64,000 bases of DNA. Source: Macrostomum hystrix. Taxonomy: Eukaryota; Animalia; Platyhelminthes. The stretch lies in NCBI GenBank assembly GCA_950097015.1, contig CATNEN010000002.1:1054001-1118000 (forward strand). The letters are read 5' to 3'. Below, piece by piece: positions 26,236 to 54,036 of the stretch. The position numbers were made by a program, and so were the translations under genes. A model generated the notes under the pieces. It was given only the letters and a program-made list of their open reading frames with translations, was not told the origin of the DNA and did no database searches. The number at the start of each line of letters is the position of its first letter. Positions within the stretch are counted from its first letter, which is position 1.

Positions 26236-29200
26236 GGCCCTGTCTCAAAGCTTAGACGACAATTTTTGAAATAAAAAAGAGGTGAAGGAAGCGATAGTTT
26301 TTTTTTATCTAAATTGTTTATTACTGGCCTTGTATCTCGAAAAATATACTTAAAGCACCAGCATCGACGAATATGTGACCTAAATACGAATTTGTTAGTT
26401 TTTTGTCCGGACTAACTGACGATTACAAAAATACATGACATTAGGTTCTTAAAAGATGTTTAGGATGTCTATAACAAAAATAAAGGAAAATAAAATTTAG
26501 AGCTAGAATTAAGCTTTCGGTTAAAAAAACTTTGTACGTTTTTTTTGTTTTTTTTTATAAAAATGACTCAAACAATAATTTAACTTGTGAAAATGCTGTA
26601 CATTTTTTATCGGTGAAGATAACTCGCACCGTTGTGTTTCGTGTGGGTACTGTTTGAATAACTCAAATAGAATTCCGAAATTTATATTTTAATTATTTTA
26701 TGTTAAAATTAGTTTATTGAAGTGTATAAACTCGTTTTATAACATTGATATGTTTTGGTATTTAATGCAATTTTGTGTATATCACGATGACATAACATAC
26801 TACATTCAGAGCCATTATTAGGTAACATTTTAAGTAGATGTAGACTAGATGTAGTTTTGATGCGAATGTTTAAAAAAGTTCAGACTAGCTTTAAAAAAAT
26901 AAAATGTAACACCAGCTAAATATATATATATATAACACGAAACTCTCTAGAATACGGGCCACAAAATTCGCAGTAAAATTGTACACTTGGCAAAAATAAA
27001 TGCAGCTTTGAAAAAAGAAAAAACCATTTAAAACAATTATAATAAGGCCTTATCTTTATACCTAATTTTTAGCAAATGTAAGGTAATATATAGTTGAAAA
27101 AAACAGAAGGATATAGAAGCTAAAGATTTTTTGCTAACTGTACTGAGTTGCAGATGAAGCTCAAAAAGTATTTTCATTGTAGACAGCAACAGAAATAAAG
27201 TAAATATAACAACTAAACAAGAGCTACTTTCAGCTGAACTGATGCCATTAAAAATGGCAATAACAACAGAAGAAACTGAATAAACTTCTAAATAGCTTTT
27301 TTTACAAACAGTTGTACTGTAAAGATCTGAACAATCTGATTAACAAAGGGCAAGCAACCCATATAAAATGTGATCCTAAAACATTTTTGTTTTAATATAA
27401 GAAAACAGGAGATTTAATACATTTTGCAATTTTTAATTGCTATTAATAACATAATAACTTTCTAGATGTGCTTATTTTTTTCAAATAATAAGCTTCAAAC
27501 CATATCTGCCACTCTAAAAGTGTCTACATTTAAAACTTTTTGCATTTATCATAGCTTTTAGTTATTATTTTATTTTTATCTATAATGCATCTCTAATTTA
27601 AACTCTATGTTAAGCGATTTGGAATCTACATGCATGATGGCACGTTTAAGTTCGTGAGTCTAGTTTCAGAATATGACAAAGTGAAGTCGTTATCTTTTAC
27701 AGCTACCTAGATCAGCAAGCGCAGTTGTTGTTTTCGTCATTTATGCTATGCATGATATAGTGCAAAAGAAGTGGAATGTAGCGAAGTCGGTGCTGGGAGG
27801 CAGATCCACACAATCATGGTGGAACCATCGAGGGCAGCCTTCGCATTGCACTCCCTGCACGTTTGCTGCACTTGGCAGAGGACACTGATCAGCAGCACAA
27901 AACGTGTGCACTACTTCATGATATCTACGCCCTTGTCCTCTGCGCCCTTGTCCGCGTCCTCGTCCGCGCCCTCGGCCACGACCTCGTCCACGACCTCGAC
28001 TGTGATCATCGTTGGAGCCAGCATCAGCGTTAGTGGTGACGCCTGCAACAGTTAAGTCACTGGCAGTGGCCCTCCGACTAGACAACTTCCAAGGGCTCCA
28101 TATGCGTGCATTAAAGCAAGTACAATCCTCTGATGCTCCTGTACAGATACAGCAAAGGTCGCGATAGATAATGCCATGCGCCGAAGACCTTGTTACGTGG
28201 TGCATCTTAGCGGCGCCCGGCATATCATTTAGGTTCACCAACAGGAACAGGTCAGTGAATTCTTTGATGTCTGTCGATTTAACTAACCATGTAAATACAC
28301 GCAGAGCATCATCCTCTTTGACAGCCCACAGAACGTCCTCCGGCGTCACAACATCTCGCTTTGCAGCCACCACCGCATCGCATCTCCGCTTCACAGCTGC
28401 ACCAACGCCATCTGCCGCACCCTTGCCGTGGCCAGCCTCAGTATAAATCCATTGCCAGTCTGAAATCGAAAAGCGCAGCATGAGACGCTGAAATACGTAA
28501 ATCATCTTCCGGCTCCGATACTGACTCGAAGGCGAATCCGATATCATTGTAACCTTCGTCAATGCAATGCCTTCTTCCTTGTACAACTTAAGAAAGTGGC
28601 CTATCACAGGCTTCAGGTGGGCGGCTATCCCATCAGCTGTCTTTGTCCTGTCTGCCGACACAGAAACAAAGGAAAACGGTGGATGATCGGCCCGATAGGC
28701 AACACCCTGGTGGATGACAATCTGATTCTGCTCGCCAAAGTGTGTCGCCTGGACTTCTTTGTGGTACTTAGCGCCATAGTTCTCGGAAAAGTCTACGTGC
28801 AAGACAAGATGACCCGGCACGAGAGTTTGCTTGAGGCGCCGAATGCAACGTAGCTGATGCCGCAGGCGGAAAAAGTGGGCGGCAAAGTCGTCGAGTTGGT
28901 TAAGAAGCATGCTGACGGCCTCGTCGCAATTGACGATCATTCTGACGACCTCTACGCCATTGCCGCTACTTCGTGATTGCCAGACGTCGAAGGTCACATC
29001 CGGCTTGTTAATTGCTGCGCTCGTCACAGGGGACAATCGTCTACAGGTTTCGCAGCGGCGCATTAGACAATCAACCGACTCATCGGAGCAGACGATCGCA
29101 TCCAGGAGATCGCGCAAGCTGCTTGTTTTCAAAAGCCGAGCCGAGTGCATCCCCTTGGCCAGGAACTCTAAGTTGGTACATTGCATGCACATGCAGATGT

Positions 29201-31430
29201 CGCGATCACACAGGCGAGGCTGAACAACATGCCAGGGCCTCAAGCGAAAGAATGTCGCCCGACTGATCTTTACTCCAGGATTCTCTCGTTTGAATTTGGC
29301 ATACAGCGCCTCGCCTGCGTAAAAATACGATTTTAAAGTTTAGAAGCGCTCTTTTACGCAGAACAATAGTTTACTGTTTACTTTTAGGAAGCAGAAAATG
29401 ATATTAAAATTGTGATTTTATTTACTAGTTTGAATCTCTCACTGCACTACATATCTGTTTCCAATTTAAGTTCCTGGACTACATCTACGCTCGTAGAATG
29501 TATATTTGTATAACTGTTCATAAAATATACTAATTGCTTGCGTTTTGTAATCAAGCCCAGCGTACCATGTAATCAATGGACTTCATTTACCTGTGGACAC
29601 AAGAAAGCGCTTCTGACGTGTCTCCTTGGTTTTCTTGCCAGCGATTACCACGAATCGCCTGATGAAATGCTTCTTCGATGATGTCGAGCGGCTATTCTCA
29701 TCATCGCACCAGAAGGCTTCTACAGATTCGTGAAGGGCTTTCGTGACTCGTCTGACAGGCGCCTTCAGAACCTTCGGGGACGCACCAAGCATCTGCATGA
29801 CAGCCTTTCGCTTATCTGGTGGCGAGGCTTCACAAATTTCTCGGATGCTTTGACGAATATGCTTTTTGCGCCGCAGACCAGCTAAGGTCTCAACCAAGAA
29901 ATTGCTCCGCCTGTCCAGATCCTCACAGCGCCGTTCAGCAGCAGCCGTTGCTTGATGCCCCCTCAATAGCTGGACACGCAGAATGCTGATCCGCCTTTTT
30001 GCTTCAATCAGCTCATCATGCAGATTTCGAGCCTCTCTTTTAAGCTTCGTGCGCTCACGGACACGTGCTGCCTCAGAACGAGAAATTGGTACGCGCTTAG
30101 ATTGCTTAGGCGGATTATTGCCTGCGGTAATTCTACTGGTCTTCTTTTTGTGGTAGTAGGCACGCTGATTTTCAAGGTAGCTGCTATGTGACCCAAAGTT
30201 CTTTTTAATGTATCTATCCTTTTTTGCTCGCAGCTTCTGCCGCTTACTAAGTGCAAAAGGCTTGCCCTGCGACGAGAGGATGAACAATGGTTGTAAGCAT
30301 GCTTTACACGTAGATCCTGTATTAACATCTTAAATCCTTAGTGCATAAACAGAGAACAAACATTCTTAAAATAATCTTTATTTCTTGACTCTTCCAATTG
30401 GGAGGAAATAATATTTATATTCAAATATTCAAAAAAATGTAGTGATATAATTTTTTGCACTATTTTGGAATAAATATATTTGTCTATAATGCATAAACCT
30501 ATTGAAATTTATTGAGGCCTATAATTTGAAATCTGTTTATGTCGATGCAAAATGAAAAAAATCATTTGCAATAATTAAAGTAATCAACATTTTTGTTAAT
30601 TTTCACGCTCCAATGCACAATGGGTAATTGTCTAGCTTGGTTACAGAACCAAAATAAAATGTATACAGACATTTACTTACAAATACATCCCTTATTTTTT
30701 AAATATAAGGTTTTGAGAAAATAAAAAAAAAGCATTTGATCATTACATTCAGCTAAACTTGGCTATAAAATTTCAGCACATTTTTTGCACTTAGTGTAGT
30801 GCTAGTGTGATTACAGAAAGTTAGTTTTGTGCTAAAATATTATAACTTTTGTCGAAATGCCAAATGTGATTAAAAATAACGCCATTTTATGCACTTCTAC
30901 TAGTATACGGAAAATATATAACTGCAGTACTGATGTGGAAGTAGTTAAATTATGTGGAAGTGCAGCATTATTTTTTCTATTTTTCTTCTTTTAAGTACGA
31001 ATTAAAACATGAAGACTTATACGGGCCAAGAATTGGGTATTTTTATCTGTAAAAGTTCTCGCCAAAAAAATACTAAATACAATTTCAATTATTAGATGAA
31101 GCTATCATGCTTAAAGTATATGACTATAAGTTTAATCTAAGACATAAATCTGCTTTATAACTTCAGTTTTTTCTTCTGAATCTTTTTAAAAGAACTAATG
31201 GCGGCCATTTTGAAACCGTGACTGATAGTTCTTTTTTAAATAATCGCCTCGAAAAATATCGCTGAATATTTTAAAAGCAATTGTAAGCAATTACTTACTG
31301 CTTAAAAGGCACCTAAAGCATTTTATTTTTCTAAATAGTATATTATTAGAAATACTTAATTGAAAGCTAAGGTGAAAAATAAAAAAAAATTGTTTAAATT
31401 CAATGGTCAGCCTAAAATTGAGACGAGGCC
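26236..31430 (-). mobile_element. DNA transposon, Sola2-like, possibly autonomous
   Basis: Imperfect TIRs GGCCCTGTCTCAAAGCTTAG (left) and GGCCTCGTCTCAATTTTAGG (right, reverse complement); 4-bp TSD GACT at 26232-26235 and 31431-31434; encloses a transposase. Confidence 0.65.
27741..30266 (-). CDS. DDD transposase (Sola2-like) with C-terminal RG repeat and PHD finger; spliced, start exon unresolved
   Basis: Exons 29591-30266 and 27741-29314 join in phase (ACA G|GC GAG) to give 749 open codons. Catalytic motifs VDFSENY, ISDSPSSQYR, HGKGAADGVGAAVKR. Also LYAKFKRENPGVKISRATFFRLRP and a PHD-like C-x4-C...QCEGCPRWFHHDCV...FFC. Confidence 0.8.
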
Positions 31431-35082: not shown

Positions 35083-35679
35083 GCTGCCGAAACCAGCGGC
35101 CTGAAGCAGAATGGCAAATTGGACGGTGCATTGCTGATTTTCATAGCTTCATAGATTCCAATTATTGCTCATAATTTCTCGCACCGATCATTATACAAAC
35201 ATATTAACATTTCAAATTAATTTTTGTGTGCTACTGATGTGCTACTACTTAAAGCAATGTAAGCGAATTCAACCTGGCAAAAACTTTTTGGCATGATTTT
35301 CTCATTGTAAAAGTAATACACACGAGACTGGACTGCAACAATTGCACTTGCAACAAAATACTTCAAAGTATTTTTTTACGGATGAAAAAGAAATGCTAGT
35401 TTAGAGCTTATGGCATTTAACAATAGCCATATGTGTTTTGAAAAAATTGTAGATTAGATTGAAAGCCTAATGCTTTGACTATTTTAAAGAAAACTGTGTA
35501 TCTGCCCACTGGGCAGCTAAGGTGCGAATTGCGCAAAATTGAAACGCCACACCGGATAAAAGTTTAGCAGAGGGCGCGTTTAAAAGTGCACCATGTGGCC
35601 TCATCGCATGTCAGACATTTGGGAGCTTGGCGTAAAAATGTAAAATGTCACGTAGAGAGCCGGCCGACTCTACGTGATA

Positions 35680-35860
35680 TTGGTCGCTGTCACACGGATA
35701 TTGGACGCTGTCACACAGATATTGGTCGCTGTCACACAGATATTGGTCGCTGTCACACAGATATTGGTCGCTGTCACACGGATATTGGTCGCTGTCACAC
35801 AGATATTGGTCGCCGGCACACAGATATTGGTCGCTGGCACACAGATATTGGTCGCTGGCA
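35680..35860. repeat. 21-bp minisatellite
   Basis: Unit cacagatattggtcgctgtca, abutting a SINE A fragment. Confidence 0.95.
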
Positions 35861-36052
35861 CACACTCACATGGGTGTGCGCATCTGCCCTGACTTTCTCA
35901 TCATCAGGCAGTGTAAAATTAATTTCCTCTGCCTTAATTATTGGAGCACGACTCCCTCAAGCCACACCCCAGTTGAATATGGCTTCACCGCGTTATCAGG
36001 CTCAGGGACCTTGGTGTGAGCTGCAAAACGCTTTAGACCGCTCTACCACTCA
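35858..36052 (-). mobile_element. SINE family A, 5' part
   Basis: catctgccctgactttctcatcatcaggcagtgta and the tRNA head ...gctttagaccgctctacc match the other copies. Confidence 0.7.
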
Positions 36053-36379
36053 CTTGCTGATACTACTTTTAGTAGACATATACTTTTCGCTTCGGAAATA
36101 AAGAAGCTACGCATTTATGAAGCTCTATTGAAGCTTCAAGTGATAACTGATTTTCGGAAATTTTAAAGCTTTTATATGATTCTCACTTAGGATCATTGCA
36201 TAAGTTCAGCATAAGCAATCTTGATTAAAAAATAGCTCGTAGCATCGCTTGGTAAATAAAACTAATAAAACTTTGTATTTTATAAGAGCACATTTAAAAA
36301 ATGTTACAGAGAAAAGCGGTTTGGTTATTATAAAAGTTAATCTATAATGTTAGTCTCAGACTAGTGCGCGCACCGATTT

Positions 36380-39360: not shown

Positions 39361-40230
39361 TTATTTGATATAGTTCATCGTCTCCAAGACTTCGGTTCTG
39401 CTGGACACTGAGTTCCGGCGACCACGTCTTCGCTTCACCGCCATGATGACTAGTGCAGACAGCACGAGAAGCAGCAGCAGGGCAACGATTCCTCCAGAAG
39501 CCAAGCCGATTAGAAGCGAAATGCTCGCCATGTCATCGTTCTTCAGGTCCGGCTCGTGCGAGGATGCAGCAGTTGTTGGCGTGGAAGAGGATGTGAATGG
39601 AGATTGCGAATACGAGGTGGAAAATGACAACGAGGAGGTCGAACTCGATGGAGACGACGACTGCATCGACTAAAAACTAAAAAACTAACTAAAAATATGC
39701 CATCGACTATACTTGCATGTGCCATTGTTCTTGCACTCGCAAACTTGATTGCATCCTCCTGTGGCTGGAAACAATTCGGTATTCACTGGCGTTAGGTTCT
39801 CTTTTGAGCTATTCAGCAGTTTTGATTCCATATTGAGTGGCACTTGAACAATTTCGTTGAGAACGACCTTAAGCCGGTCCGAAGTACACCGAAGTATTTT
39901 TGTTCCAAGGGAAGCTGCTCGGAAATTCGGCGGGAGTATCCACACCAAGCGGAATACCGTTCAGAACCCACCAAGTGCCACTCGAGTTCTGTAGCACTAC
40001 GGTTAGGGTAAACCACTCGCCTGAAACAATACTTATTTTCGCTTTCACATCGACCTCCACCGTATTAACCTTTCCATTCGCCGATAGCCAGATGAATATA
40101 GCTGCGAGATAGTTTTCTCTATTCCATGACACAACCAAATGACCGGTGCCAAAATTCACCAGGCCGAGAATTACGGTCGCATCTGTGCAATGGGATATGT
40201 TCGAAAATCGATATCGATTCGAAGTAGCTC
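39361..40230 (-). pseudogene. Disrupted Crumbs-like paralog (LamG, partial EGF, Ser/Thr stalk, TM)
   Basis: SSFPWNKNTSVYFG and NEIVQVPLNMESKLLN align to 47112 (GRFPWGRNTSFHIG, DQIVKVPLHTKSELLN). Frameshift near 39875 and stop near 39685; TM segment in 39361-39666. Confidence 0.7.
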
Positions 40231-42685
40231 AGATCCGCTTCCCTCAGGTGGTTGGCCTAGCCGATTTTATGTCTTTAAGTTTGTCGGTGTCTTATCAAAC
40301 GCATTATCTACCTGAATTTCTGTTTTCTCTGTTTTCACACGGTGCTTTAGTGGAGAAAAAGTTCCAGAGTAAAAACTAACGGCGAAGATAGTAAAGCCTC
40401 TTATCACTTTTCAGGTAATTCAGACAATCGTTTTTTGACTTGGCTATGCTTTTCTCGCGTCTAAATTACTTGCTAATCAATCGTTAATGAATTTAATCAA
40501 ACCCGTGGCTGGCTCCATGCGAAGGCTGGAAATCCCACTGCAGTGCTGATCCTAAAGTGGGAGGGGATCAGGCCTTACTCTTCCCAGTGTCACCCGCCCT
40601 AGTGATGATTGGTAGCTTGTTTGTGGTCCGATTGGCCAAGGTCCATTGCCTACTCTATTTCTAGGCAAGGGAGTATTAGGGTAGGGACTACTTAGAGTAG
40701 TTCTGCAACCACACTCCATAACTAAAACCTAACGAGGCTAATATTGAGGCCAGAAAGAAAGAGAATAATGGCCGCTAGAGGGACTCTATGTTGGGCATTT
40801 TCTGGTTGTCCTGGTCAGTGCTGGAAGCAAGGTCTTTCGCATAGGGGAGTTATTTTTTACATTACCCAATCCTACCTCAGCTTGGGGTGAGGAACTTGCT
40901 AAAGTTTAATTATAGAGGCTCAATCCCCTCTTACAAGGTCTGTGCCGCGTTTCGTTGGTGAAAGCCTAACCTCTCAAGAATGCGGCTCTGTGTGAAAACT
41001 GTACTGCTGTTAGTAGGGATATTAGAGTTTCATTATTGCTTAATATATTTTATTATTTTGCCTGCCAGTAAACTCCTCTTGGATCGCAGTGACTCTTTAC
41101 TCACCAGACTGCCTGCTTAAGTGAGCAGGGGAAACAGACAAAAGAATTGGATTTAGCTATTTGACAACCCTGAGCAGTGACTCAAAACTGGCAATAATTA
41201 TATTAGCCCAATGTGGTCTAAAGTAAGAGCAAATACCCTGAGTCTGGCTCAATCAAGTCGCAGCTGTACTGCAGGTCAGGTATCGGTCAGGCATGACCCA
41301 AGGGTGTCTTCTTCGTAGGAAAAGCGATGGGATTGTGTAGGGTAGAAAACACGCATCACGCGCGTGAACCGTGATGGAAAGTCTCCGTTGACCCAGCCTT
41401 GACCATCCAAAGTGCACAACCGAGCACTGCCACGTTCTGATTCGCACGACGCGGCACAGTATGCTTGGGGGTGGGTGAGGTAGCTTGTATTAGATAATAG
41501 TAACGTAATAGGCTCATTAATTATGCTTTTGCTAAATAATTACAATAATTATTTATTAAAACACACATCTTTAAGGTTACAACGAGAAGATAAATAAATT
41601 CAAGTTACATTTGGGAAAAGTACCAAGGCAAGGATTTGCGAAAATTTTAAAGGAATTTTTAGAATAAGCTTTCGTCTCGCTCGAGCGAACCAGAACAATG
41701 GGAAGCGGAGGTGGACGTTTTGAGGGATAGAACGGATAGATCAAACGGATGAGTTATCGAGTCGCAAGTTTCAACCTCCCAGGCTGGCCTCGATCAAGGC
41801 CTCCTTGAAATTTTATTCGGTAAACTGGCAACTAGTGCGCAAGTAAAATAGTAAAACTATTTATAAATAAGTTTAGAAACATTAGCTTGATTGCCTAAAA
41901 ATTTACAATTATGTGAACTGAAAATCATTCCCTTGAATGTAATAATCTATTTGTGCCTTACGCCTTTGAGCCGACGTCTGATTGTTGTGGGAACCGAGAA
42001 CTATTTTAACTGAAACGTACTTTACGAAAGTTTTATACCGCTACCAGAAAATTGACTTTTGAATTGATCAGTTGAACTGGCTCTCATTTCGCTCGTCTTT
42101 TTCGTAGCTCTTGTTTATGTCGGGAAAGTAGGTCTGATTTCCTTAGTCAAAAATTGGTCAAACACCGCTCGTGGAATTTTCTAAGAAATCCGACGAAACG
42201 AAAAATGCACGAAAACGTAAAACTCGAAAAAAAGAAATATTCTGAATCAGTTAAAAACGCGAACCTTGGTTGGACATTGGCGTATAATTGTAAAAATTAC
42301 GAGCTCCATCGACCACGCTTGACGTCAGAGAAACTATCGACGTTTTCATTCGATTAGGCTTATTCCACTATAATATATTATAATTATTAGTGTTATCTTA
42401 GAAAAAAATCAAAAGATAAAAAGTAAAATTTTGCGTAAACAATCGATTTATCATACGAAAGCCTCATTTGGGTACCTCGCATCAAATGTATTTTAAAATA
42501 GATAAATAAATGAATACATTCGAAATGAAGACTGTTACAGTTAAAAATACAACGAACTCGTTTTAAGTCCATGCATTGTTAAAGTAATAACAGTCAGGCC
42601 TGCAATTAGAACCGAAAAATTGCAACAAAAACGGGAAATTAGAGTTCAAAGTTTCTAATTTTTTGAAGTCCCTATTATCTACACA

Positions 42686-43037
42686 TGGGGTGGAGGCAGA
42701 GTGGGTTAACGCGTTGCCTCTCGCATTTGTGTCCTGAAGCTCGATTCCGCGGCGAAGCCACATTTTTTGGGGCGCAGCCGCGGAGAGAAGGCTTGGAGGC
42801 TTGTCTTACAAGGGCTTAGCCCTTGTGGGCTAACCTCCAAGGCATTGTGAAATTTACACTTGACGACGAGAAAGTCAGGGCAGATGTACACACCTGTGTG
42901 AGCGTGTGCCTGCGTACAGTATCTGTGTGCGTGTGTGCTCAGGAGTCAGCGAAGTGGGCAGAATTGTCTCCTCGCTGGCTGAGGGTCTAGTGTCACCAAA
43001 TGATGTGCCCACAGCCCTCCTGCAATTATTATTATTA
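42686..43037 (+). mobile_element. tRNA-derived SINE family A, full length
   Basis: A-box ggaggcagagtgg, B-box gctcgattcc, (ATT)n tail; ends about 60 bp from the stop of the mini-Crumbs gene. Confidence 0.85.
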
Positions 43038-43097
43038 TGCGGTTATCTACACATGTTCTGAACATATTTATTCACAATATGATTCCATGCAGCAGGT

Positions 43098-44447
43098 TCA
43101 AATTAATCGTTCGTCTTTCGGTGGTCGCATCGGATGACTCATTGCCATGCTTGTGTCTCTGCCCGCCTGCACCTCTCGTCGGCTTGGCCTATACGCTCCG
43201 GAATCTCGACGCCTCTCTCTGATGATCTTAGCGACCACGAAAGCAACAATCGCGATAATAAGGATGGCAATTATGATGCTAACTGTGACGCTAATTATTA
43301 GAGTAATATCTAGTCCCGGCTGTAGCTCAAACTCGGTGCAATTTCTGCCGGAATACCCTGACGCACAGATGCAGTTGTAATCGAGTGACTCCGGATGCTC
43401 GAGTTCGCCAGTAAGAGTGCAATTCACAGTGTTGCTCTGACACGCTTGGCAAATATTGAAGCTCTGGCATCGTGTTCCCAGATAATCTTGGGTGCAATTG
43501 CATTCATAATTTTCGACGCCTGGCTTGTTGGAGCAGGTACCCCCATTCTGGCATCGTAGTTCCATGTCCAAATTTTCGCAAGTGTTCCATTCGCTCTTGC
43601 ACATCGAGTCGGGTGTGTAGCCCCGGGTGCAGTTGCATCTTTCCAGCAAGTCCCACTGACGGTAGATGCACATGCCGTTCGGCTCGCAAGGACAAGGCGC
43701 CTGACGACACCCAGCCTCCTCTGGCAGCCTGGATGTAGAGTCCAGCCGCAGGTAGTCCGTGATGTTCAGCAGATCCGATTTCGAAGAAAGCGGCATCGAT
43801 ATTATGTTATCAAGGCTGACATTGGCAAAGCAGCCCCTGAATGTGCCAGCTATTTCAATCGATGTACTATTGTCCCAAGGAAAATAATAAGTGTAATTTT
43901 TCAACAGCTCATCCTGGATTGTTTCACCGTTATATACTAGCGATCCATTACTCTCTGCAGTCATTGTTAAATGGTGCCAGGAGCCGTTCGCAACACCTGG
44001 AGCCGGACGGATGAGCTCTTCATAAGCCAGTTCGCTAACGTTATGTCCTTCGGGATTTCGCAAATATATTAGTCGCACTTTAACTTCATCAGCTGATTGA
44101 ATCTGGACCGTAAGGGTTTCGTTTCGCTGATTGACAATTGAGAACAGGAAAGAATTGCTTGCTTGAGATGTGCGAAAATTCAAATTTATTTGTTCCAACA
44201 GAGTCTTGTTGGCACTCGCTGAACCGGCGAGATGAAACCGAGCTGAGTTCGATTCATTAAACGTGCCGCTTTCCGGTGTTGAAGAAATATCGAAATCTTT
44301 AATGGCCAAATATGATGATGTGTGGACACTTCCAGAAAACAACAAGATAACTGCTATAAACAGGCGAGGCTGCATACTAATAATTCTTCTGTAAGCTTGA
44401 GCTTCGTCGCTTTTAGCTGACAGATTTCGATCGCGCCTGAGTAACAT
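43098..44447 (-). CDS. Short Crumbs-like type I membrane protein: signal peptide, LamG, 3 EGF, TM, Crumbs tail
   Basis: Tail RRRDSGAYRPSRREV...RPPKDERLI has the Crumbs FERM-binding GxYxPSxxE and PDZ-binding ERLI motifs. Three 6-Cys EGF repeats; LamG motifs (LNFRTS, WHHLTM, FRGCFANV). Likely start at the second Met (MQPRLFIAVILLF). Confidence 0.9.
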   Translation of the reverse strand: MLLRRDRNLSAKSDEAQAYRRIISMQPRLFIAVILLFSGSVHTSSYLAIKDFDISSTPESGTFNESNSARFHLAGSASANKTLLEQINLNFRTSQASNSFLFSIVNQRNETLTVQIQSADEVKVRLIYLRNPEGHNVSELAYEELIRPAPGVANGSWHHLTMTAESNGSLVYNGETIQDELLKNYTYYFPWDNSTSIEIAGTFRGCFANVSLDNIISMPLSSKSDLLNITDYLRLDSTSRLPEEAGCRQAPCPCEPNGMCIYRQWDLLERCNCTRGYTPDSMCKSEWNTCENLDMELRCQNGGTCSNKPGVENYECNCTQDYLGTRCQSFNICQACQSNTVNCTLTGELEHPESLDYNCICASGYSGRNCTEFELQPGLDITLIISVTVSIIIAILIIAIVAFVVAKIIRERRRDSGAYRPSRREVQAGRDTSMAMSHPMRPPKDERLI

Positions 44448-47111
44448 GCGCCAACTTAAAGAGATTGTCCTCAGGTAGCGTATATTTTAGCCTCGATTAG
44501 TACGCACCTCGGGGCTGACTGCACCACGTAAGCGCATGCACATTTTTTGCAATGCCTTGCTTAGATAAGATACTAAGCACATACCAATTTGCTTGTGGCA
44601 CATACCAATCAAGTTTCATAAATTCGCCATTTGCTGTGCTTGGCACAGAAAAAAACACTGCCACTATCGCATGCCTACTTGGCTTGACGCAGCCAGTTTA
44701 GATGTATTTCATTACATTTCACTTCAGTCCCAATTATTGTCTTCCTTTAGTCCAAAGCGGTGCAGGACAACAAGACGGCTCCGCTGCGGCAGTCGAGACC
44801 GTCGGGTCTACGACATAAGCCAGACAGCCGTTTGCCAGCTGGAAACGAGGCCCTGTATAACAAAGCCCGTCAACTATTCCGCACCTTAAGCGGCTTCAGG
44901 TGGATGACCACGACTCCTTATTTCCCTACAGGTGGTCTCGTCTCGTCTCGGAGCAATAATATCAGAGTTTTCGCAAAAAAATAATAAAACCCATGTTTTT
45001 AGTCCGCAATGAATAAACTTCGCATTTGCTCGTGAAAATGTACTCAGACTATGGGCAAAAACAGTTGTTCATACCTGAGAATATTTTGCGAGTCTTATGA
45101 AATGATCGTCAGCGACTAGTAAATGATAGGCTTTATGAATGAAGAAAGGTAGCAGCTACGAGTACTAAGAGTAGCTCAGATTTCTACGTGTGAGGACACC
45201 ATATGAGCTGGATCGGCTTGTAGTCCACGAACTCAGATGCAGAAGAAAACAAAGCCTTTACATTTTCCAGCTTAGATTAAACTTTATCAATAATTTTGAA
45301 TTTTATCAATATCTTGAGGAGAGCATGACAACCGTTGATAAGGATCGTGATGCATGCTCCGACTCCGGAGCATGCATCGTTTCGTTGATATCGTTCAGGC
45401 GCTGCACTCTGGCAGGTCTTCTCGCGGTCTAACAGACATTGCTCATGTCGCACGTTGGTGCGGGAAGCCGCTCTTACACATCCTTCTCAATTACTTTGCC
45501 AACGCCCCCATCATGCCGCTTGGTATGACACAGCAGGCGAAAATTTATGTCGAGGCTCTTTCCAACAACACACGGAATAAGTATCTGATTATCGGAAAAC
45601 GTATTCTCAGTGCCAAAGTGTGTTATCAACTCGCGCCTCAGAATGTTGCTAGTTGAATTACACTTTTCTGACGCTACAGAACTCCGGAATTGCTTCCACA
45701 CAAGTAAAGGTGTGAGTTCATATAGCTCTCTTCTCCCATAGCTTCCTATATAGCTCCCATAGCTATATAGCTTCCTTTGACCTTTCGATAATTATATTTT
45801 ATTTAATCCAAGCTATGCTTGTGTTGTGTTTGCTTACTTGTGTGGAGAGTAGAATGCTCAACGTGCTACTTAAAGTAATGACACGGGTAAGTGTAAGCAA
45901 TAACTGATGATCTTTTTTAGGACTCGAATGCTATTTTTAGACATGGCTTTACGTTACTTAGGAATATTACATAATGGCAAAACGGTTCTTAACTGCAGTT
46001 TTTCCAACACTTCCATAAATGGTAGCATTCACCTGAAACTCCCCAAAATGCAGCTGAGCAAAAACGCTTGACCCCAATATTTCTGATACAATAAAATTTG
46101 CTTTGCGTGTTAATGAATTGAGTTCTTTATAGCCAGCTTTAGTCGTTAACGAGATCCGCATATCGTCGACGCATTTGAGAAAGGCTTTGTATACAGAGCT
46201 GTTGCGCACAGGTTACAGAGCTTACAGGATTTATTGATTGAATAAAGATACACTTTGCGCTTCAGACATAACAAAGATGACACCCTTCCTGAGGAACTAG
46301 GCAAGATTTTAAGCGATTTTTATTGGGCGCACGTTCTATTGCGAATTCCGAGTTCGAAGACATTGTTAAGGATTCTTATTCACTCTCGACATCGGTCAAC
46401 CCATAGATAAAGTTTGAGCACAGTACGAGCGTAGTGACAGCGGCCAGTTCTACCACCCTCAGACGACTAAGGAGAGGCTCCGCAACACCTGAACAAGAAA
46501 CAAACACTCGGCCGATTAAGAAGCTGAAGCAGTAGAAAGTAACCTGAGTAAGTGCCTACATTTTCTAATCCTGAGTTGTTAACTAATTGGTATGTGAAAT
46601 TGGTGAAATACGATCAGTAGCATGGCTTCGATCATTAACTTTTTAAGTCAGTCTGCTAATTTTTCTATAAAGTCTTTGAATACTTACTTGAATTTATTTT
46701 AAGAAATTGTTTTCTTGATTGGAAAGCCCAGAGAGCCTGTTAAAAGCAAATTTCACAGTACACTCCGACCTTGTTTGATATTTCATACCAAATATTTCAG
46801 CTCTTTTTCTAAGAGTAAATATGATAAGCTATGCACGCCGGGGCTTTGCGAAGATCACTGTATATCACTAAATTTAGACCTGAGTCTTGAGTCATGTGTG
46901 GCTTTTTATCAATAGATATATTGAATTTTTGTACGTTACTGAAATGACTTGGAGATATGACCACACATAATGCTGACACTTAGCCGCCCTTAAAAAGCCT
47001 GCCTCTTATCGCCAAAATCACCGACCTTGAATATCGAATGATAGACCAGGCACTGGGACAAGCATTGAAAGTCTACGGCTAAAAAACACATTGCCTAAGA
47101 TTTAGACCAGC

Positions 47112-48257
47112 TTGGCTAGTCCAATTAACGTCAAACTTCAGATCAGCATGTCCATTCCACTTCTGATGCTGGTGCTAGCGGCAGTGGCAGTCCGAGCGGA
47201 GGTAGCCACCTTCAAAAGAGATAACTTCGCATCCTACAAACTCCTTAGAGCGCCGAACGCTTCGGAGCCGTTTCTGAAGCAATTTGAGCTGGAGTTCCGA
47301 ACCTCTGCTAGAAGCACATATTTTCTGATTTTTTTGGAAAATGATAACAACGAAGATATCATCATCGACTTTTCTAAAGCAAATGTGACGCTTCGTATTA
47401 TTCTGACTTGGAATGTAAACAATAAGTCCACGGTAACAAAAATCTACATGAAGGAACCAGTCATCAACGACGGAGAGTGGCATCACCTGAAAATGCAGAC
47501 AGAGGGCGGTGGGCAGATCGTGTTGGACGGTCGGTTCGTCGAGCAATTGCCAAGCAACTTCACTGGACGATTTCCATGGGGTAGAAATACGAGTTTTCAC
47601 ATCGGCGATGATTATCGAGGCTGCATTGCCAATGCGAGTCTGGACCAGATCGTCAAAGTGCCGTTGCACACAAAATCGGAGCTGCTAAACCAAACGGACT
47701 TCCTGAAGACTATCGAAGTGAAGGACTTGCCAGACTCTGAACCCGGCTGTCGGCAGCAAGATTGCCCCTGCCTAAACAGCGGCGTCTGCATCTTTCGGCA
47801 ATGGGACCTGCTTGATCGGTGCAACTGTACTCGAGGATACGAGGGAAGAACTTGTCAATATGAGTGGGACACCTGCAAAAATCTTCAGACTGGACCACCT
47901 TGCCTCAATGGAGGCACCTGTTCCAACCGGCTAGGCTTGTATAACTATCAGTGTTACTGTGCTTCGGGATTTCTCGGAAAAGTCTGCCAGAACACTAGCC
48001 CCTGTCGATCTTTGCCCTGTCAGAACGGAGGCCTCTGCATGATATCCGGCGATCCGGAACGGCAGGAAACTCTGACTTACGCTTGCGAGTGTCTATCTGG
48101 CTTCACCGGAACCAACTGCACTGAGGTGGCCAGCACACAAGCACCAGCTCAGGACATTGCGCATATTATTATTCCGATAGCGATTGTGCTCTCGCTGTGC
48201 GGTCTGGCGATGGCTCTCGTTTTTTCCTACTTAATGTTTAGGCAAAGGAATCAATGA
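47112..48257 (+). CDS. Crumbs-like paralog (LamG, 3 EGF, TM) with almost no cytoplasmic tail
   Basis: Signal MSIPLLMLVLAAVAVRA; LEFRTS, INDGEWHHL, YRGCIANASL; CIFRQWDLLDRCNCTRGY is shared with 43098; ends FRQRNQ* right after the TM. Confidence 0.9.
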   Translation: MASPINVKLQISMSIPLLMLVLAAVAVRAEVATFKRDNFASYKLLRAPNASEPFLKQFELEFRTSARSTYFLIFLENDNNEDIIIDFSKANVTLRIILTWNVNNKSTVTKIYMKEPVINDGEWHHLKMQTEGGGQIVLDGRFVEQLPSNFTGRFPWGRNTSFHIGDDYRGCIANASLDQIVKVPLHTKSELLNQTDFLKTIEVKDLPDSEPGCRQQDCPCLNSGVCIFRQWDLLDRCNCTRGYEGRTCQYEWDTCKNLQTGPPCLNGGTCSNRLGLYNYQCYCASGFLGKVCQNTSPCRSLPCQNGGLCMISGDPERQETLTYACECLSGFTGTNCTEVASTQAPAQDIAHIIIPIAIVLSLCGLAMALVFSYLMFRQRNQ

Positions 48258-50948: not shown

Positions 50949-51482
50949 TTACTTCTTATTCTTCATGAATAAATAGACCACCAGACCTACCAAGCCTGCA
51001 GAGATAATAATTCCGAGAGGAATTGTGAGTCCCAGAATGAGTCCAATCGGTACGTCATTGTGTGTACAGTTTTTCACAGTGAAACTGCTGGAATAAGGTT
51101 CGATTAGCGGGGCATACAGGTGCAGAATATGACTGGCGTGCATCTCAGTGCCATTGGTTTTCTCTCGCAGAGTCACCTGCACAGAAATTAGGTCTCGCCC
51201 GGTCAACTCAGAATTATCCTTAGCTACAAATGGATCTTGCATGCTCAGCAAATAACCATTCGGATATGCTGCTTGAAACTCCACTTCCAGTAGCTTTGCA
51301 GATAGATCATCGTCGTTGGGTGTTTGGACCAATCGCAGCGCGCCCTGTGTATCTCGACTGTACGAATATGTTGCTAGTTTTGTCCTCTGGGCGCATCCGG
51401 CTCCGACTAGTAACGCGGCAAGCAGGAGAAACCTTGGCGCAGCCGCAAGACTTCTTCGTGCCATCCTGCAGCCAGTTGACAC
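50949..51482 (-). CDS. Internally deleted Crumbs-like paralog (signal, N-half of LamG, TM)
   Basis: Signal RFLLLAALLVGAGCA; ATYS...LRLVQTP...LLEVEFQAA aligns weakly with the paralog LamG start; jumps to KNCT (last EGF Cys) and the TM; ends MKNKK*. Confidence 0.65.
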   Translation of the reverse strand: MSTGCRMARRSLAAAPRFLLLAALLVGAGCAQRTKLATYSYSRDTQGALRLVQTPNDDDLSAKLLEVEFQAAYPNGYLLSMQDPFVAKDNSELTGRDLISVQVTLREKTNGTEMHASHILHLYAPLIEPYSSSFTVKNCTHNDVPIGLILGLTIPLGIIISAGLVGLVVYLFMKNKK

Positions 51483-52836: not shown

Positions 52837-54036
52837 TTAAACTTTATATTTTGGTGTGACTGGATTATTAGTTCCTTTCTTCCGACCTTTCAACACAACT
52901 ATCAAACCGATGGTTGTTAGACTTATTAGTAAAATGGAGCCAAATGTCACGCATAAGATTATGATGAGAGCAGTTGGGTCATGGCTGCTCAAGTCGGGAC
53001 GTGGGACAAACTCGGTGCAATTCTTCCCCCTGAATCCTGATGCGCAGCTGCACATGTAACTTATAGAATCCTGGCGTTCCTCATCGCCATAGATAATGCA
53101 GGTGCCTCCATTTTCGCACGGATTATATGGCCTGCAAGGACTGGCGTTTTGACAGCGTTTTCCGACAAATCCCGAGGCGCAGATGCACTGAAAGCTCTCT
53201 AATCCAGGTACATTGCGGCACGTTGCATTGTTTAGGCAGGGCGGGCCACCTTCCAGGTTCAAGCAGGTGTCCCATTCGCTCCTGCACATTGAAGCAGGAG
53301 TGTATCCGCGAGTGCAGTTACAACGATCCACCAGATCCCATTGCTTGTAAATACAGGCTCCTTTTGGCTCACACGGGCAGGGAGCCTGGTGACAACCAAG
53401 TTTCTTAGGCAGATCTTGAAGCGCGATGGCCTTCAAAGAGTCAGTCTGATTGAGTAGCATTGACTGAGCACTCAATGGCACCTGGATGACGCCATCTAGA
53501 GTAACGTTAGCAAAGCAGCCACGGAAAAAATATCCGAAAGCTAACATGACGTTGTTTTCGTATCGAAAGCGTGCAGTGAAGTTGTTTGGAAGGCGACCTG
53601 CCAGTGGCTTTCCATCCAGATGCAGCAGCCCACCGCTCTCAATCGACATGGACAGACTGTGCCACTCGCCGTCGGAGATGCCCGGAGCTGCGATCTCCTG
53701 CATGTACCAATGCTGGCTCGAACTATGGTCATTCGTAGCGTTCCAAAATAGCATCAATGTCAGCTTGTCGTGACCGTTTAGTTTGACAGAAAGTTGCTCC
53801 GATCCATCATTTTTTGCGTAGAACAGATTGCCAACCATGTCGCGCTGGGAAGTTCGAATTTTCATTTCCATCGTGCCCAAGAAGGGAATATTCGCGCTTG
53901 GTGCTCTGAGCAATTTGTACATGGCCATGTTGCTGGAGATAAACGTGGCTGTCTCTTGGCCAGACGACTGTCCCGTCAGTTGAAGCAGCAGAGCTATTGT
54001 AAGATAGCTCCATTTGTCAGTGCTAGAGCGTTTCAT
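52837..54036 (-). CDS. Crumbs-like paralog (LamG, 3 EGF, TM) with a short divergent tail
   Basis: YKLLRAPSANIPFL, ISDGEWHSL, FRGCFANVTLD, CPCEPKGACIYKQWDLVDRCNCTRGYTPASMC (near-identical to the 43098 EGF1); tail KGRKKGTNNPVTPKYKV*. Confidence 0.9.
   Translation of the reverse strand: MKRSSTDKWSYLTIALLLQLTGQSSGQETATFISSNMAMYKLLRAPSANIPFLGTMEMKIRTSQRDMVGNLFYAKNDGSEQLSVKLNGHDKLTLMLFWNATNDHSSSQHWYMQEIAAPGISDGEWHSLSMSIESGGLLHLDGKPLAGRLPNNFTARFRYENNVMLAFGYFFRGCFANVTLDGVIQVPLSAQSMLLNQTDSLKAIALQDLPKKLGCHQAPCPCEPKGACIYKQWDLVDRCNCTRGYTPASMCRSEWDTCLNLEGGPPCLNNATCRNVPGLESFQCICASGFVGKRCQNASPCRPYNPCENGGTCIIYGDEERQDSISYMCSCASGFRGKNCTEFVPRPDLSSHDPTALIIILCVTFGSILLISLTTIGLIVVLKGRKKGTNNPVTPKYKV

What the first reader, a model, noticed from the sequence alone, without database searches (positions are those of the whole stretch)
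43098..44447. Self-contained 449-aa 'mini-Crumbs' with intact FERM- and PDZ-binding motifs
It has its own signal peptide, one LamG, three EGFs, a TM and the tail GAYRPSRREV...PPKDERLI, all in one exon. Short Crumbs forms are known (vertebrate CRB3, nematode CRB-3), but as I recall them they have a different ectodomain. This may be an independent origin of a short polarity determinant.
Basis: partly seen in the sequence, partly recalled or inferred. Interest (0 to 1): 0.72.

Follow-up and report, generated by a model that had tools for sequence, protein, structure and literature searches.

The report
Intronless short Crumbs gene in flatworm
A flatworm-type genome carries a transcribed, single-exon gene for a much shortened Crumbs cell-polarity protein that keeps only the last laminin-G domain, three EGF domains, the membrane anchor and the Crumbs tail. 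It is a new shape for a well-known protein family, not a new kind of system.

Summary
On the minus strand, 43098-44447 is an uninterrupted ORF encoding a signal peptide, one divergent LamG domain, three EGF domains (20 Cys), a TM helix and a 40-residue Crumbs tail (RRDSGAYRPS ... PPKDERLI).

RNA-type contigs from three runs lie colinear over 43009-44417 with at most one mismatch. Nothing lies on the 2.4 kb upstream, and the window holds no other EGF/LamG coding pieces except four paralogous loci. So it is a self-contained gene, not the last exon of a long crumbs.

Two corrections:
- The likely start is Met25 (ATG at 44375), giving 425 aa.
- The FERM-binding motif matches RxxxGxYxPS, but it lacks Arg7 and both aPKC threonines, which are near-invariant in 120 canonical Crumbs.

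The protein aligns colinearly with the C-terminal part of canonical Crumbs (last LamG; last three EGFs, TM and tail). A profile of 99 canonical Crumbs C-termini scores it at 118 bits. No protein with this architecture turned up in the public protein collections.

Polarity function is inferred, not shown. I found no full-length crumbs for this genome, and the search could not settle it.

Earlier scan notes, untested here, report a second mini-Crumbs cluster about 929 kb away and a 109-aa CRB3-like gene elsewhere in the genome.

Verdict: a new variant of a known kind, of moderate interest.

The parts
43098..44375 (-). Most likely CDS, 425 aa plus the stop at 43098-43100, starting at Met25 of the listed ORF
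   Evidence: ORF. It is the first AUG inside the RNA contig and is followed at once by the signal peptide.
44376..44447 (-). In-frame 24-codon upstream extension of the ORF (MLLRRDRNLSAKSDEAQAYRRIIS). Probably 5' UTR or untranscribed. Positions 44418-44447 are not covered by the RNA contigs.
   Evidence: An in-frame stop lies 14 codons upstream of the ATG at 44447.
43009..44417 (-). Stretch covered by one colinear 1409-nt RNA-type contig in each of runs X3, X4 and X5 (0, 0 and 1 mismatches; no gaps or joints)
   Evidence: table 8. Depth is zero over 44570-46933 in all four runs (table 2).
44417..44422 (-). TGTCAG at the 5' end of the RNA contig. It is either a CAG splice or trans-splice acceptor (exon from 44416) or an initiator-like TCAG start site. 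Unresolved.
   Evidence: Sequence, contig end. The M. lignano trans-splice acceptor motif is YTNCAG and the spliced leader ends in G (PMC8629364).
44313..44375 (-). Signal peptide, aa 1-21
   Evidence: Basic n-region, a 9-residue hydrophobic core and a small-residue c-region. AF2 helix at aa 4-13. All paralogues start the same way.
43731..44267 (-). Divergent laminin-G (LNS) domain, about aa 37-215 (Pfam envelope 43809-44177)
   Evidence: BLASTP places aa 38-346 on the last LamG plus EGFs of a canonical Crumbs.
43599..43709 (-). EGF-like module 1 (aa 223-259), with an extra Cys in a CPC motif
43467..43580 (-). EGF-like module 2 (aa 266-303)
   Evidence: Pfam EGF best stretch.
43338..43451 (-). 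EGF-like module 3 (aa 309-346)
43233..43313 (-). Transmembrane helix (aa ~355-381)
   Evidence: Kyte-Doolittle maximum 3.3. AF2 helix at aa 357-391.
43101..43220 (-). Cytoplasmic tail, 40 aa (RERRR...DERLI)
43182..43211 (-). FERM-binding motif RRDSGAYRPS (fits RxxxGxYxPS)
   Evidence: Motif definition from PMC5968619. Comparison with 120 canonical tails.
43101..43112 (-). C-terminal PDZ-binding motif ERLI
   Evidence: All 120 canonical Crumbs end in ERLI.
43067..43072 (-). AATAAA in the 3' UTR. The RNA contig runs past it to 43009.

Best explanation
This is a complete, intronless, transcribed gene for an N-terminally shortened member of the Crumbs family.

What the protein is (shown):
- About 425 aa, or about 404 after signal-peptide cleavage.
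- A type I membrane glycoprotein with 14 N-glycosylation sequons.
- Its ectodomain corresponds to the membrane-proximal end of a canonical Crumbs. It keeps the last LamG domain and three EGF modules. About four or five EGFs that lie between them in long Crumbs are missing.
- A TM helix and a 40-residue Crumbs tail follow.
- The gene sits in a tandem family of five paralogous loci, and it is the only member that keeps the Crumbs tail.

How it most likely works (inferred from what is established for Crumbs tails):
- The C-terminal ERLI binds the PDZ domain of Stardust/PALS1 (and Par6), which recruits PATJ/Lin7.
- The juxtamembrane RxxxGxYxPS motif binds FERM proteins of the Moesin/Yurt/Expanded type.
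- The protein would therefore mark and stabilise apical membrane. In flies a membrane-tethered Crumbs tail alone rescues most crb defects.
- Thr6 and Thr9 (the aPKC sites) and Arg7 are replaced, so aPKC control of FERM binding is probably absent or different.

Likely origin (inferred): truncation of a long crumbs, possibly by retroposition, followed by tandem duplication and tail loss in the other copies.
For: Transcription and single-exon structure:
- Each of X3, X4 and X5 holds a 1409-nt contig colinear at 43009-44417.
- Depth is zero at 44570-46933, while the neighbouring gene is covered at a different depth. That pattern fits RNA rather than DNA.

No hidden exons:
- tblastn with the protein, two paralogues and a multi-EGF Crumbs fragment finds coding similarity only at the five paralogous loci.
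- Every paralogue begins with its own signal peptide and has an in-frame stop 11-20 codons upstream of its ATG; the target's is 38 codons upstream of Met25.

Family membership:
- BLASTP against a 1859-aa canonical Crumbs (P0011; 23 EGF stretches and 3 LamG) aligns aa 229-425 with residues 1676-1859, the protein's end (35% identity, E 1e-22).
- The same comparison aligns aa 38-346 with residues 1290-1580, the last LamG plus EGFs (E 1e-15).
- A profile of the last 600 aa of 99 canonical Crumbs gives 118 bits, with profile positions 471-660 matching aa 223-425. Five shuffled copies and a reversed copy gave no hit.
- The only eukaryotic Cys-rich hit of the LamG profile in 1.84 billion representatives is that same Crumbs.
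- The protein atlas feature search ranks CRB1/CRB2 clusters first, at 0.96.

Tail: RxxxGxYxPS and ERLI are both present (motif definitions from PMC5968619).

Selection: the paralogues are 40% identical with every EGF Cys kept. dN is 0.5-0.6, dS is saturated, and omega is at most about 0.28.
Against: - No binding, localisation or loss-of-function data exist, so the function is inference.
- The runs are not labelled RNA. That is inferred from the coverage pattern.
- The true 5' end is not fixed. The contig ends on a CAG, so splicing there (to the spliced leader or to alternative upstream non-coding exons) is possible.
- Arg7, reported as needed for Moesin recruitment by fly Crb (cited in PMC3564977), is Ser here, and the tail carries a 2-3 residue insertion. 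FERM binding may be weakened.
- The LamG assignment rests on sub-threshold Pfam scores and a low-confidence model (pLDDT 53.6).
Confidence: 0.7

Rival explanations
1. The protein is real, but it is not a polarity determinant. On this reading it is a lineage-specific surface receptor or adhesion molecule of the LamG-EGF family. It uses the inherited Crumbs tail only as an anchor to PDZ/FERM scaffolds and works together with its tail-less paralogues through ectodomain binding.
For: - Four paralogous loci keep parts of the ectodomain but have other tails or none, so selection seems to act on the ectodomain itself.
- The FERM motif is non-canonical.
- Crumbs ectodomains are reported to bind each other homophilically and heterophilically in zebrafish (PMC12510390).
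- In C. elegans all three crumbs genes are dispensable for polarity (PMC4359734).
Against: ERLI and the core FERM motif have been kept although dS is saturated between paralogues. That points to continued use of the canonical partners.
Confidence: 0.2
2. The ORF is the last exon of a longer multi-exon crumbs gene, with upstream EGF/LamG exons outside the stretch examined.
For: - The reading frame stays open for 24 codons upstream of Met25.
- The RNA contig ends exactly on a CAG that could be a splice acceptor.
Against: - The contig has no non-genomic extension, so a single dominant cis-spliced form is excluded.
- No RNA lies on the 2.4 kb upstream.
- No EGF/LamG coding segments exist anywhere in the window apart from the paralogues, each of which has its own signal peptide.
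- A hydrophobic signal sequence would otherwise sit in the middle of an ectodomain.
- The next upstream gene is on the opposite strand.
Confidence: 0.04
3. It is a transcribed but functionless retrocopy or decaying duplicate of part of a crumbs mRNA.
For: - The gene is intronless and is a truncated version of a larger gene.
- It lies in a repeat-rich region next to a degenerate paralogue (39361-40162) and a truncated one (50949-51482).
Against: - The 425-codon frame is intact and all 20 Cys are in EGF/LamG register.
- Both tail motifs are kept and omega is at most about 0.28 against old paralogues.
- It is expressed at a depth similar to its neighbours.
Confidence: 0.06

Closest known systems
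Canonical long Crumbs (Drosophila Crb, vertebrate CRB1/CRB2). Represented here by P0011, GAB6032299.1 of the millipede Chamberlinius hualienensis, 1859 aa.
   Same: - Type I membrane protein.
- Colinear homology from the last LamG through the EGFs and the TM to the tail.
- RxxxGxYxPS and a terminal ERLI.
   Different: - Lacks about 20 EGFs and two LamG domains at the N-terminus, and about 4-5 EGFs between the last LamG and the TM.
- Intronless.
- The tail is 2-3 residues longer and lacks Arg7, Thr6 and Thr9.
Zebrafish Crb2b-sf (short form made from an alternative start site in intron 7)
   Same: An N-terminally shortened Crumbs that keeps membrane-proximal LamG/EGF domains, the TM and the tail (PMC7044448, PMC12510390).
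   Different: - Crb2b-sf is an isoform of a long gene. It lacks only the first 11 EGFs and keeps all three LamG domains.
- The present protein is a separate single-exon gene with one LamG and three EGFs.
C. elegans EAT-20
   Same: A Crumbs family member with a reduced ectodomain carrying three EGF repeats and conserved FERM- and PDZ-binding residues (PMC4359734).
   Different: EAT-20 is 808 aa and no LamG domain is reported for it. No specific sequence similarity was tested here.
Vertebrate CRB3 and C. elegans CRB-3
   Same: Short Crumbs proteins that consist mainly of the TM and the conserved tail (PMC4359734, PMC2064851).
   Different: Their ectodomains are tiny and lack LamG or EGF domains. 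The present protein has a folded ectodomain of about 330 aa.
Beta-neurexin (an analogy of architecture only)
   Same: One LNS/LamG domain, a single TM and a short tail. A short form sits beside a long multi-LNS/EGF alpha form (PMC3084293 abstract). A neurexin-1-beta tail cluster was the top, weak, atlas hit for the TM-plus-tail piece (0.87). The 4.1/FERM- and PDZ-binding sites of the neurexin tail are stated from my own knowledge.
   Different: No homology of the tail is claimed. Beta-neurexin arises from an internal promoter, not from a separate gene. The score is below the level that counts as evidence.

Membership tests
Crumbs family | Type I single-pass membrane protein with an N-terminal signal peptide | tested here: met
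   Hydrophobic N-terminal signal-like stretch and one TM (hydropathy; AF2 helices). No dedicated signal-peptide predictor was available.
Crumbs family | Ectodomain built of EGF-like and laminin-G-like domains | tested here: met
   Three EGFs. One LamG, supported by sub-threshold Pfam hits, Foldseek hits to LamG/LNS domains and a profile hit to a Crumbs LamG.
Crumbs family | Short cytoplasmic domain (37 aa in the fly; under about 40 aa) | tested here: met
   40 residues after the TM. From the motif's Gly to the C-terminus there are 33 residues, against 30-31 in 120 canonical Crumbs.
Crumbs family | Juxtamembrane FERM-binding motif RxxxGxYxPS | tested here: met
   RRDSGAYRPS, with all five defining positions present (definition in PMC5968619).
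Crumbs family | C-terminal class II PDZ-binding motif ERLI | tested here: met
   The protein ends ...PPKDERLI.
Crumbs family | Sequence homology colinear with bona fide Crumbs | tested here: met
   BLASTP E 1e-22 and 1e-15. Canonical C-terminal profile 118 bits, with no hit for shuffled controls.
Crumbs family | aPKC phosphorylation sites (TxGT) and Arg7 in the FERM motif, a bilaterian feature | tested here: not met
   The residues are D-S-G-A here, against T-R-G-T in 114 of 120 canonical proteins. PMC5968619 reports these sites absent in sponges, placozoans and C. elegans, so this trait is not family-defining.
Crumbs family | Binds Stardust/PALS1, Par6 and FERM proteins; localises apically | not testable with these tools
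   Needs biochemistry and imaging.
Canonical long Crumbs (Crb/CRB1/CRB2 type) | Large ectodomain with about 19-30 EGFs and 3-4 LamG domains | tested here: not met
   One LamG and three EGFs. No further exons in the RNA or in the window.
CRB3 / CRB-3 type | Very small protein with a minimal ectodomain lacking domains | tested here: not met
   425 aa with a folded LamG-EGF ectodomain.

The most novel reading that the evidence does not exclude
Macrostomid flatworms evolved their own family of 'mini-Crumbs' genes by truncating, and possibly retroposing, the 3' part of crumbs.

In this family, tail-bearing and tail-less members with matching LamG-EGF ectodomains are arranged head to head. They would act as a ligand/receptor or dominant-negative pair that tunes apical membrane identity.

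This would be a route to a short polarity determinant independent of CRB3. It might replace or supplement a long Crumbs in this lineage.
Probability: 0.25. Interest if true: 0.65.

Novelty: new variant of a known kind. Interest (0 to 1): 0.42.

Why it matters
- Crumbs ectodomain function is much less understood than tail function. A natural, compact LamG-3xEGF Crumbs would give a small, genetically tractable system for asking what the membrane-proximal ectodomain does. It comes with sister genes that keep the ectodomain but have lost the tail.
- That depends on the organism being a Macrostomum species, where RNAi and transgenesis exist.
- The gene documents another way in which short Crumbs proteins arise, beside CRB3-type genes and internal promoters.
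- It shows which tail residues survive long divergence (R-4, G, Y, P, S, E, PP, ERLI) and which do not (the aPKC sites and Arg7).

Tried and rejected
- **Word-index protein searches.** With the protein alone the only hit was P0001, a 521-aa Crumbs-like fragment. With a five-sequence alignment the only hits were P0001, P0038 and an Asterias kinase-EGF protein. No protein of the same architecture appeared. Sensitivity is limited, and the candidates were capped at 8000.
- **Exact look-ups.** The target and its paralogues are not in the 15-billion-protein collection or on its contigs.
- **Exhaustive HMM search with the LamG profile.** It gave 36 weak hits. All are Cys-poor (<=2.6% Cys) multi-repeat proteins ranked by the LamG profile, except one canonical Crumbs; the five I read look like bacterial LamG_3-type repeats. 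No family members were found.
- **Tail-region search with a canonical Crumbs.** This was meant to find a flatworm long Crumbs. Only the best 120 of 252 hits are shown and none is a flatworm. So it remains unresolved whether this genome has a full-length crumbs.
- **AF2 with a 4-row alignment.** It gave a poor model (pLDDT 53.6), usable only for fold class.
- **dN/dS.** dS is saturated, so only an upper bound on omega can be given.
- **Other searches.** Rfam on 42400-47200 found nothing. The M. lignano spliced-leader sequence is not in the window. The atlas search with the TM-plus-tail piece scored below 0.9 and gives leads only.
- **Literature.** No paper on Crumbs in Macrostomum or planarians was found.
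- **Pure spliced-leader trans-splicing.** I considered this for the 5' end and rejected it. A 31-mer graph contig would then carry about 24 leader bases, and it carries none.
- **Organism.** I did not verify it independently. 'Macrostomum' comes from earlier scan notes.

Full report
**1. The observation**

The minus strand carries an uninterrupted ORF at 43098..44447, 449 codons from the first ATG. It is one of only six ORFs of 380 aa or more in the 64-kb window. An open frame of that length is far beyond what a 43% G+C sequence gives by chance.

Numbering below is from Met25 = 1.
- **Signal peptide.** A signal-peptide-like start, MQPRLFIAVILLFSGSVHTSS.
- **LamG.** A LamG-like region.
  - Pfam Laminin_G_2 gives E 0.0018, below the curated cut-off.
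  - Both full-length paralogues give the same sub-threshold hit.
  - The AF2 model is weak (pLDDT 53.6). Even so, Foldseek puts laminin alpha-2 LG5, SHBG, agrin, perlecan and neurexin LNS domains on top (E 1e-5 to 1e-6).
- **EGF modules.** Three modules, with 20 Cys in all, equal to 3 x 6 plus one extra pair. phmmer against Notch EGF repeats gives 1.3e-7.
- **TM and tail.** One strongly hydrophobic TM and a 40-residue tail containing RRDSGAYRPS and ending PPKDERLI.
- **Glycosylation.** The ectodomain has 14 N-glycosylation sequons.

**2. Is it a gene on its own?**

*RNA evidence.* One sequencing study holds the stretch. In each of three runs (X3, X4, X5) a single 1409-nt contig lies colinear on 43009-44417, with 0, 0 and 1 mismatches and no gap or joint. 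Depth is zero from 44570 to 46933 in all four runs laid. The divergent neighbouring gene at 47112-48257 is covered at a different depth. The runs are not labelled, but this pattern is what RNA gives and DNA does not. So the coding region is one exon and is transcribed.

*The 3' end.* The contig stops 30 nt into a very high-copy repeat (42797-43038, depth above 10,000). That is what a 31-mer assembly graph does at a repeat boundary.

*The 5' end.* It is the same, 44417, in all three runs, and the contig has no non-genomic extension. A single dominant cis-spliced upstream exon would have extended the contig, so it is excluded. Pure spliced-leader trans-splicing would have left about 24 leader bases in the contig, so it is excluded too.

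The end sits on TGTCAG. The M. lignano leader ends in G, and its acceptor motif is YTNCAG (PMC8629364). Two readings remain, and these data cannot separate them:
- A mixture of leader-spliced and other forms, branching at that point in the graph.
- A sharp start site at an initiator-like TCAG.

*No hidden exons.* tblastn with the protein, two paralogues and a multi-EGF Crumbs fragment finds EGF/LamG coding similarity only at the five paralogous loci. The next gene upstream is on the other strand. Each paralogue begins with its own signal peptide and has an in-frame stop 11-20 codons upstream of its ATG (38 codons upstream of Met25 for the target).

I put the 'last exon of a long crumbs' reading at about 4%.

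*The start codon.* The ATG at 44447 is outside the RNA contig and has a poor context (C at -3). Met25 at 44375 is the first AUG in the contig, has A at -3, and is followed at once by the signal peptide. The protein is therefore most likely 425 aa. Signal-peptide cleavage would remove either N-terminus, so the mature protein should be the same.

**3. What it is**

*Comparison with a canonical Crumbs.* I compared the protein with P0011 (millipede, 1859 aa; 23 EGF stretches and 3 LamG). Two colinear pieces align:
- aa 229-425 with residues 1676-1859, which are the last three EGFs, the TM and the tail up to the final residue (35% identity, E 1e-22).
- aa 38-346 with residues 1290-1580, which are the last LamG and the EGFs after it (26% identity, E 1e-15).

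The alignment shows that about four or five EGFs between the last LamG and the TM of long Crumbs are missing here.

*Profile test.* A profile built from the last 600 residues of 99 canonical Crumbs scores the target at 118 bits. Profile positions 471-660 run to the target's C-terminus. Five shuffled copies and a reversed copy give nothing. The tail-less paralogue at 47148-48257 matches the LamG part of the same profile much better (70.6 bits). That ties the family's LamG to the last LamG of Crumbs.

*Independent searches.*
- The exhaustive search of 1.84 billion representatives with the family's LamG profile returned 36 weak hits. All are Cys-poor (<=2.6% Cys) multi-repeat proteins ranked by the LamG profile; the five I read look like bacterial LamG_3-type repeats. 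The only Cys-rich eukaryotic protein among the 36 was that same Crumbs.
- The atlas feature search ranks CRB1 and CRB2 clusters first, at 0.96.

The protein is thus a true Crumbs relative that keeps only the membrane-proximal end of the ectodomain.

**4. The tail**

The Crumbs signature is a short tail carrying RxxxGxYxPS and a terminal ERLI (PMC5968619). The fly tail has 37 residues. ERLI binds Stardust and Par6, and the FERM motif binds Yurt, Expanded and Moesin (PMC3564977). The target meets both motifs.

It is not canonical in detail. The 120 long Crumbs retrieved were selected by similarity to a canonical tail, so the comparison is biased. Among them:
- All end in ERLI.
- The Gly-to-end distance is 30 or 31 residues. 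The target has 33.
- The four residues around the Gly are R..T-R-G-T in 114 of 120. The target has R..D-S-G-A.

So both aPKC threonines and Arg7 are absent. Arg7 is reported as needed for Moesin recruitment in S2 cells (cited in PMC3564977). 'Intact FERM-binding motif' is therefore only partly right, and aPKC regulation is probably missing. The same is reported for sponges, placozoans and C. elegans (PMC5968619).

**5. Context**

The window holds five related loci:

| Locus | Coordinates | Strand | Content |
|---|---|---|---|
| Target | 43098-44375 | - | LamG, 3 EGF, TM, Crumbs tail |
| Tail-less paralogue | 47148-48257 | + | Head to head with the target, 2.6 kb apart; also transcribed |
| Third paralogue | 52837-54036 | - | 399 aa, tail ends PKYKV |
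| Short derivative | 50949-51482 | - | 171 aa: signal peptide, part of the LamG, TM |
| Degenerate or spliced copy | 39361-40162 | - | LamG pieces in different frames, Ser-rich stalk, TM |

- The three full-length proteins are 40-50% identical, and all EGF cysteines are kept.
- dN is 0.5-0.6 and dS is saturated, so omega is at most about 0.28. The family is old and constrained.
- Only the target has the Crumbs tail. The two other full-length genes are closer to each other than to it. The simplest history is that the tail is ancestral to the cluster and was lost or replaced in the other copies.
- Earlier scan notes, not tested here, report a second cluster with a tailed/tail-less head-to-head pair about 929 kb away and a 109-aa CRB3-like gene on another piece of the genome.

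**6. How it most likely works**

*Shown:* gene structure, transcription, domain architecture, and homology to Crumbs.

*Inferred from established Crumbs biology:*
- The protein enters the secretory pathway and is heavily glycosylated.
- It sits in the apical membrane, where ERLI recruits PALS1/Stardust-PATJ (and Par6) and the FERM motif links it to the cortical cytoskeleton.
- The membrane-tethered intracellular domain alone rescues most fly crb phenotypes (cited in PMC4359734). A short ectodomain therefore does not argue against polarity function.

*Main rival (about 20%):* the family is chiefly an ectodomain-driven receptor or adhesion system, and the tail is only an anchor. Crumbs ectodomains are reported to bind each other (PMC12510390).

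**7. Comparison with what is known, and novelty**

| Known short form | How it compares |
|---|---|
| CRB3 and CRB-3 | Almost no ectodomain |
| EAT-20 | 808 aa, three EGFs |
| Zebrafish Crb2b-sf | An internal-promoter isoform that lacks only the first 11 EGFs |

- Truncated Crumbs-like genes have also been mentioned for a sponge (PMC9729800).
- A separate, intronless gene with exactly one LamG and three EGFs, embedded in a family of tail-less sisters, was not found in the protein collections or in the literature searched.
- These negatives are weakened by the word index. I also do not know how well this organism's proteome is represented in the collections.
- I rate it a new variant of a known kind, with interest about 0.4. 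It is useful to people who study the Crumbs ectodomain or flatworm epithelia, but it is not surprising in principle.

**8. Limits**

- I did not verify the organism independently.
- Whether a long crumbs exists in this genome remains open. One search showed no flatworm among the best 120 of 252 hits.
- The read tool could be used only once.

Noticed in passing
47112-48257 (+), true start probably ATG at 47148: A tail-less paralogue of 369 aa: signal peptide, LamG, 3 EGF, TM and a tail of only a few residues. It lies head to head with the target, 2.6 kb away. RNA-type contigs cover it, and several carry 3-17 differences, which suggests further near-identical copies or alleles.
   Followed up: partly
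52837-54036 (-): A 399-aa paralogue with the same ectodomain and a different short tail ending PKYKV, which could itself be a PDZ ligand. It is closer to the tail-less gene (about 50% identity) than to the target (about 41%).
   Followed up: partly
50949-51482 (-), ATG at 51464: A 171-aa derivative with a signal peptide, roughly the first half of the LamG domain, then a TM and a four-residue tail. It is either a truncated family member or a decaying copy.
   Followed up: no
39361-40162 (-): A fifth family locus. LamG pieces lie in two frames. A partial first EGF follows, then a Ser-rich stalk, a TM and a basic tail in a third ORF. It is either a pseudogene or a copy with short introns.
   Followed up: no
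42797-43038: A very high-copy transcribed repeat immediately 3' of the gene. Summed contig depth reaches 10,800, against 30 for the gene, with many rearranged joints and loose ends. No Rfam match.
   Followed up: partly
43108-43109: In run X1 (a different organism label, about 98% identical contig, depth 9.4) two adjacent changes turn the Arg codon of ERLI into Ile, giving EILI. A relative or paralogue may therefore have an altered PDZ ligand. A second adjacent pair of changes lies at 43081-43082 in the 3' UTR.
   Followed up: no
beyond the window's end (about 4.8 kb) and another piece of the genome: Earlier scan notes place a Cav1 L-type channel gene next to this cluster, and a 109-aa CRB3-like gene inside an intron of a Cav1 gene on another piece. 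If the two Cav1 regions are duplicated segments, the CRB3-like gene could be a positional relative of the mini-Crumbs genes.
   Followed up: no
27741-29243 (-): A 500-codon ORF with a C-terminal PHD finger (E 9e-5, below cut-off) and a Gly-Arg repeat. It looks like a transposon-borne or orphan protein rather than a host gene exon.
   Followed up: no
35586-36101 (+): An ORF made largely of tandem TDIGRCH heptapeptide units, that is a 21-nt minisatellite read through as protein.
   Followed up: no
4088-4744 (-): An ORF matching the N-terminal region of PI4-kinase (Pfam PI4K_N, E 6e-12). It is probably one exon of a PI4KA gene.
   Followed up: no
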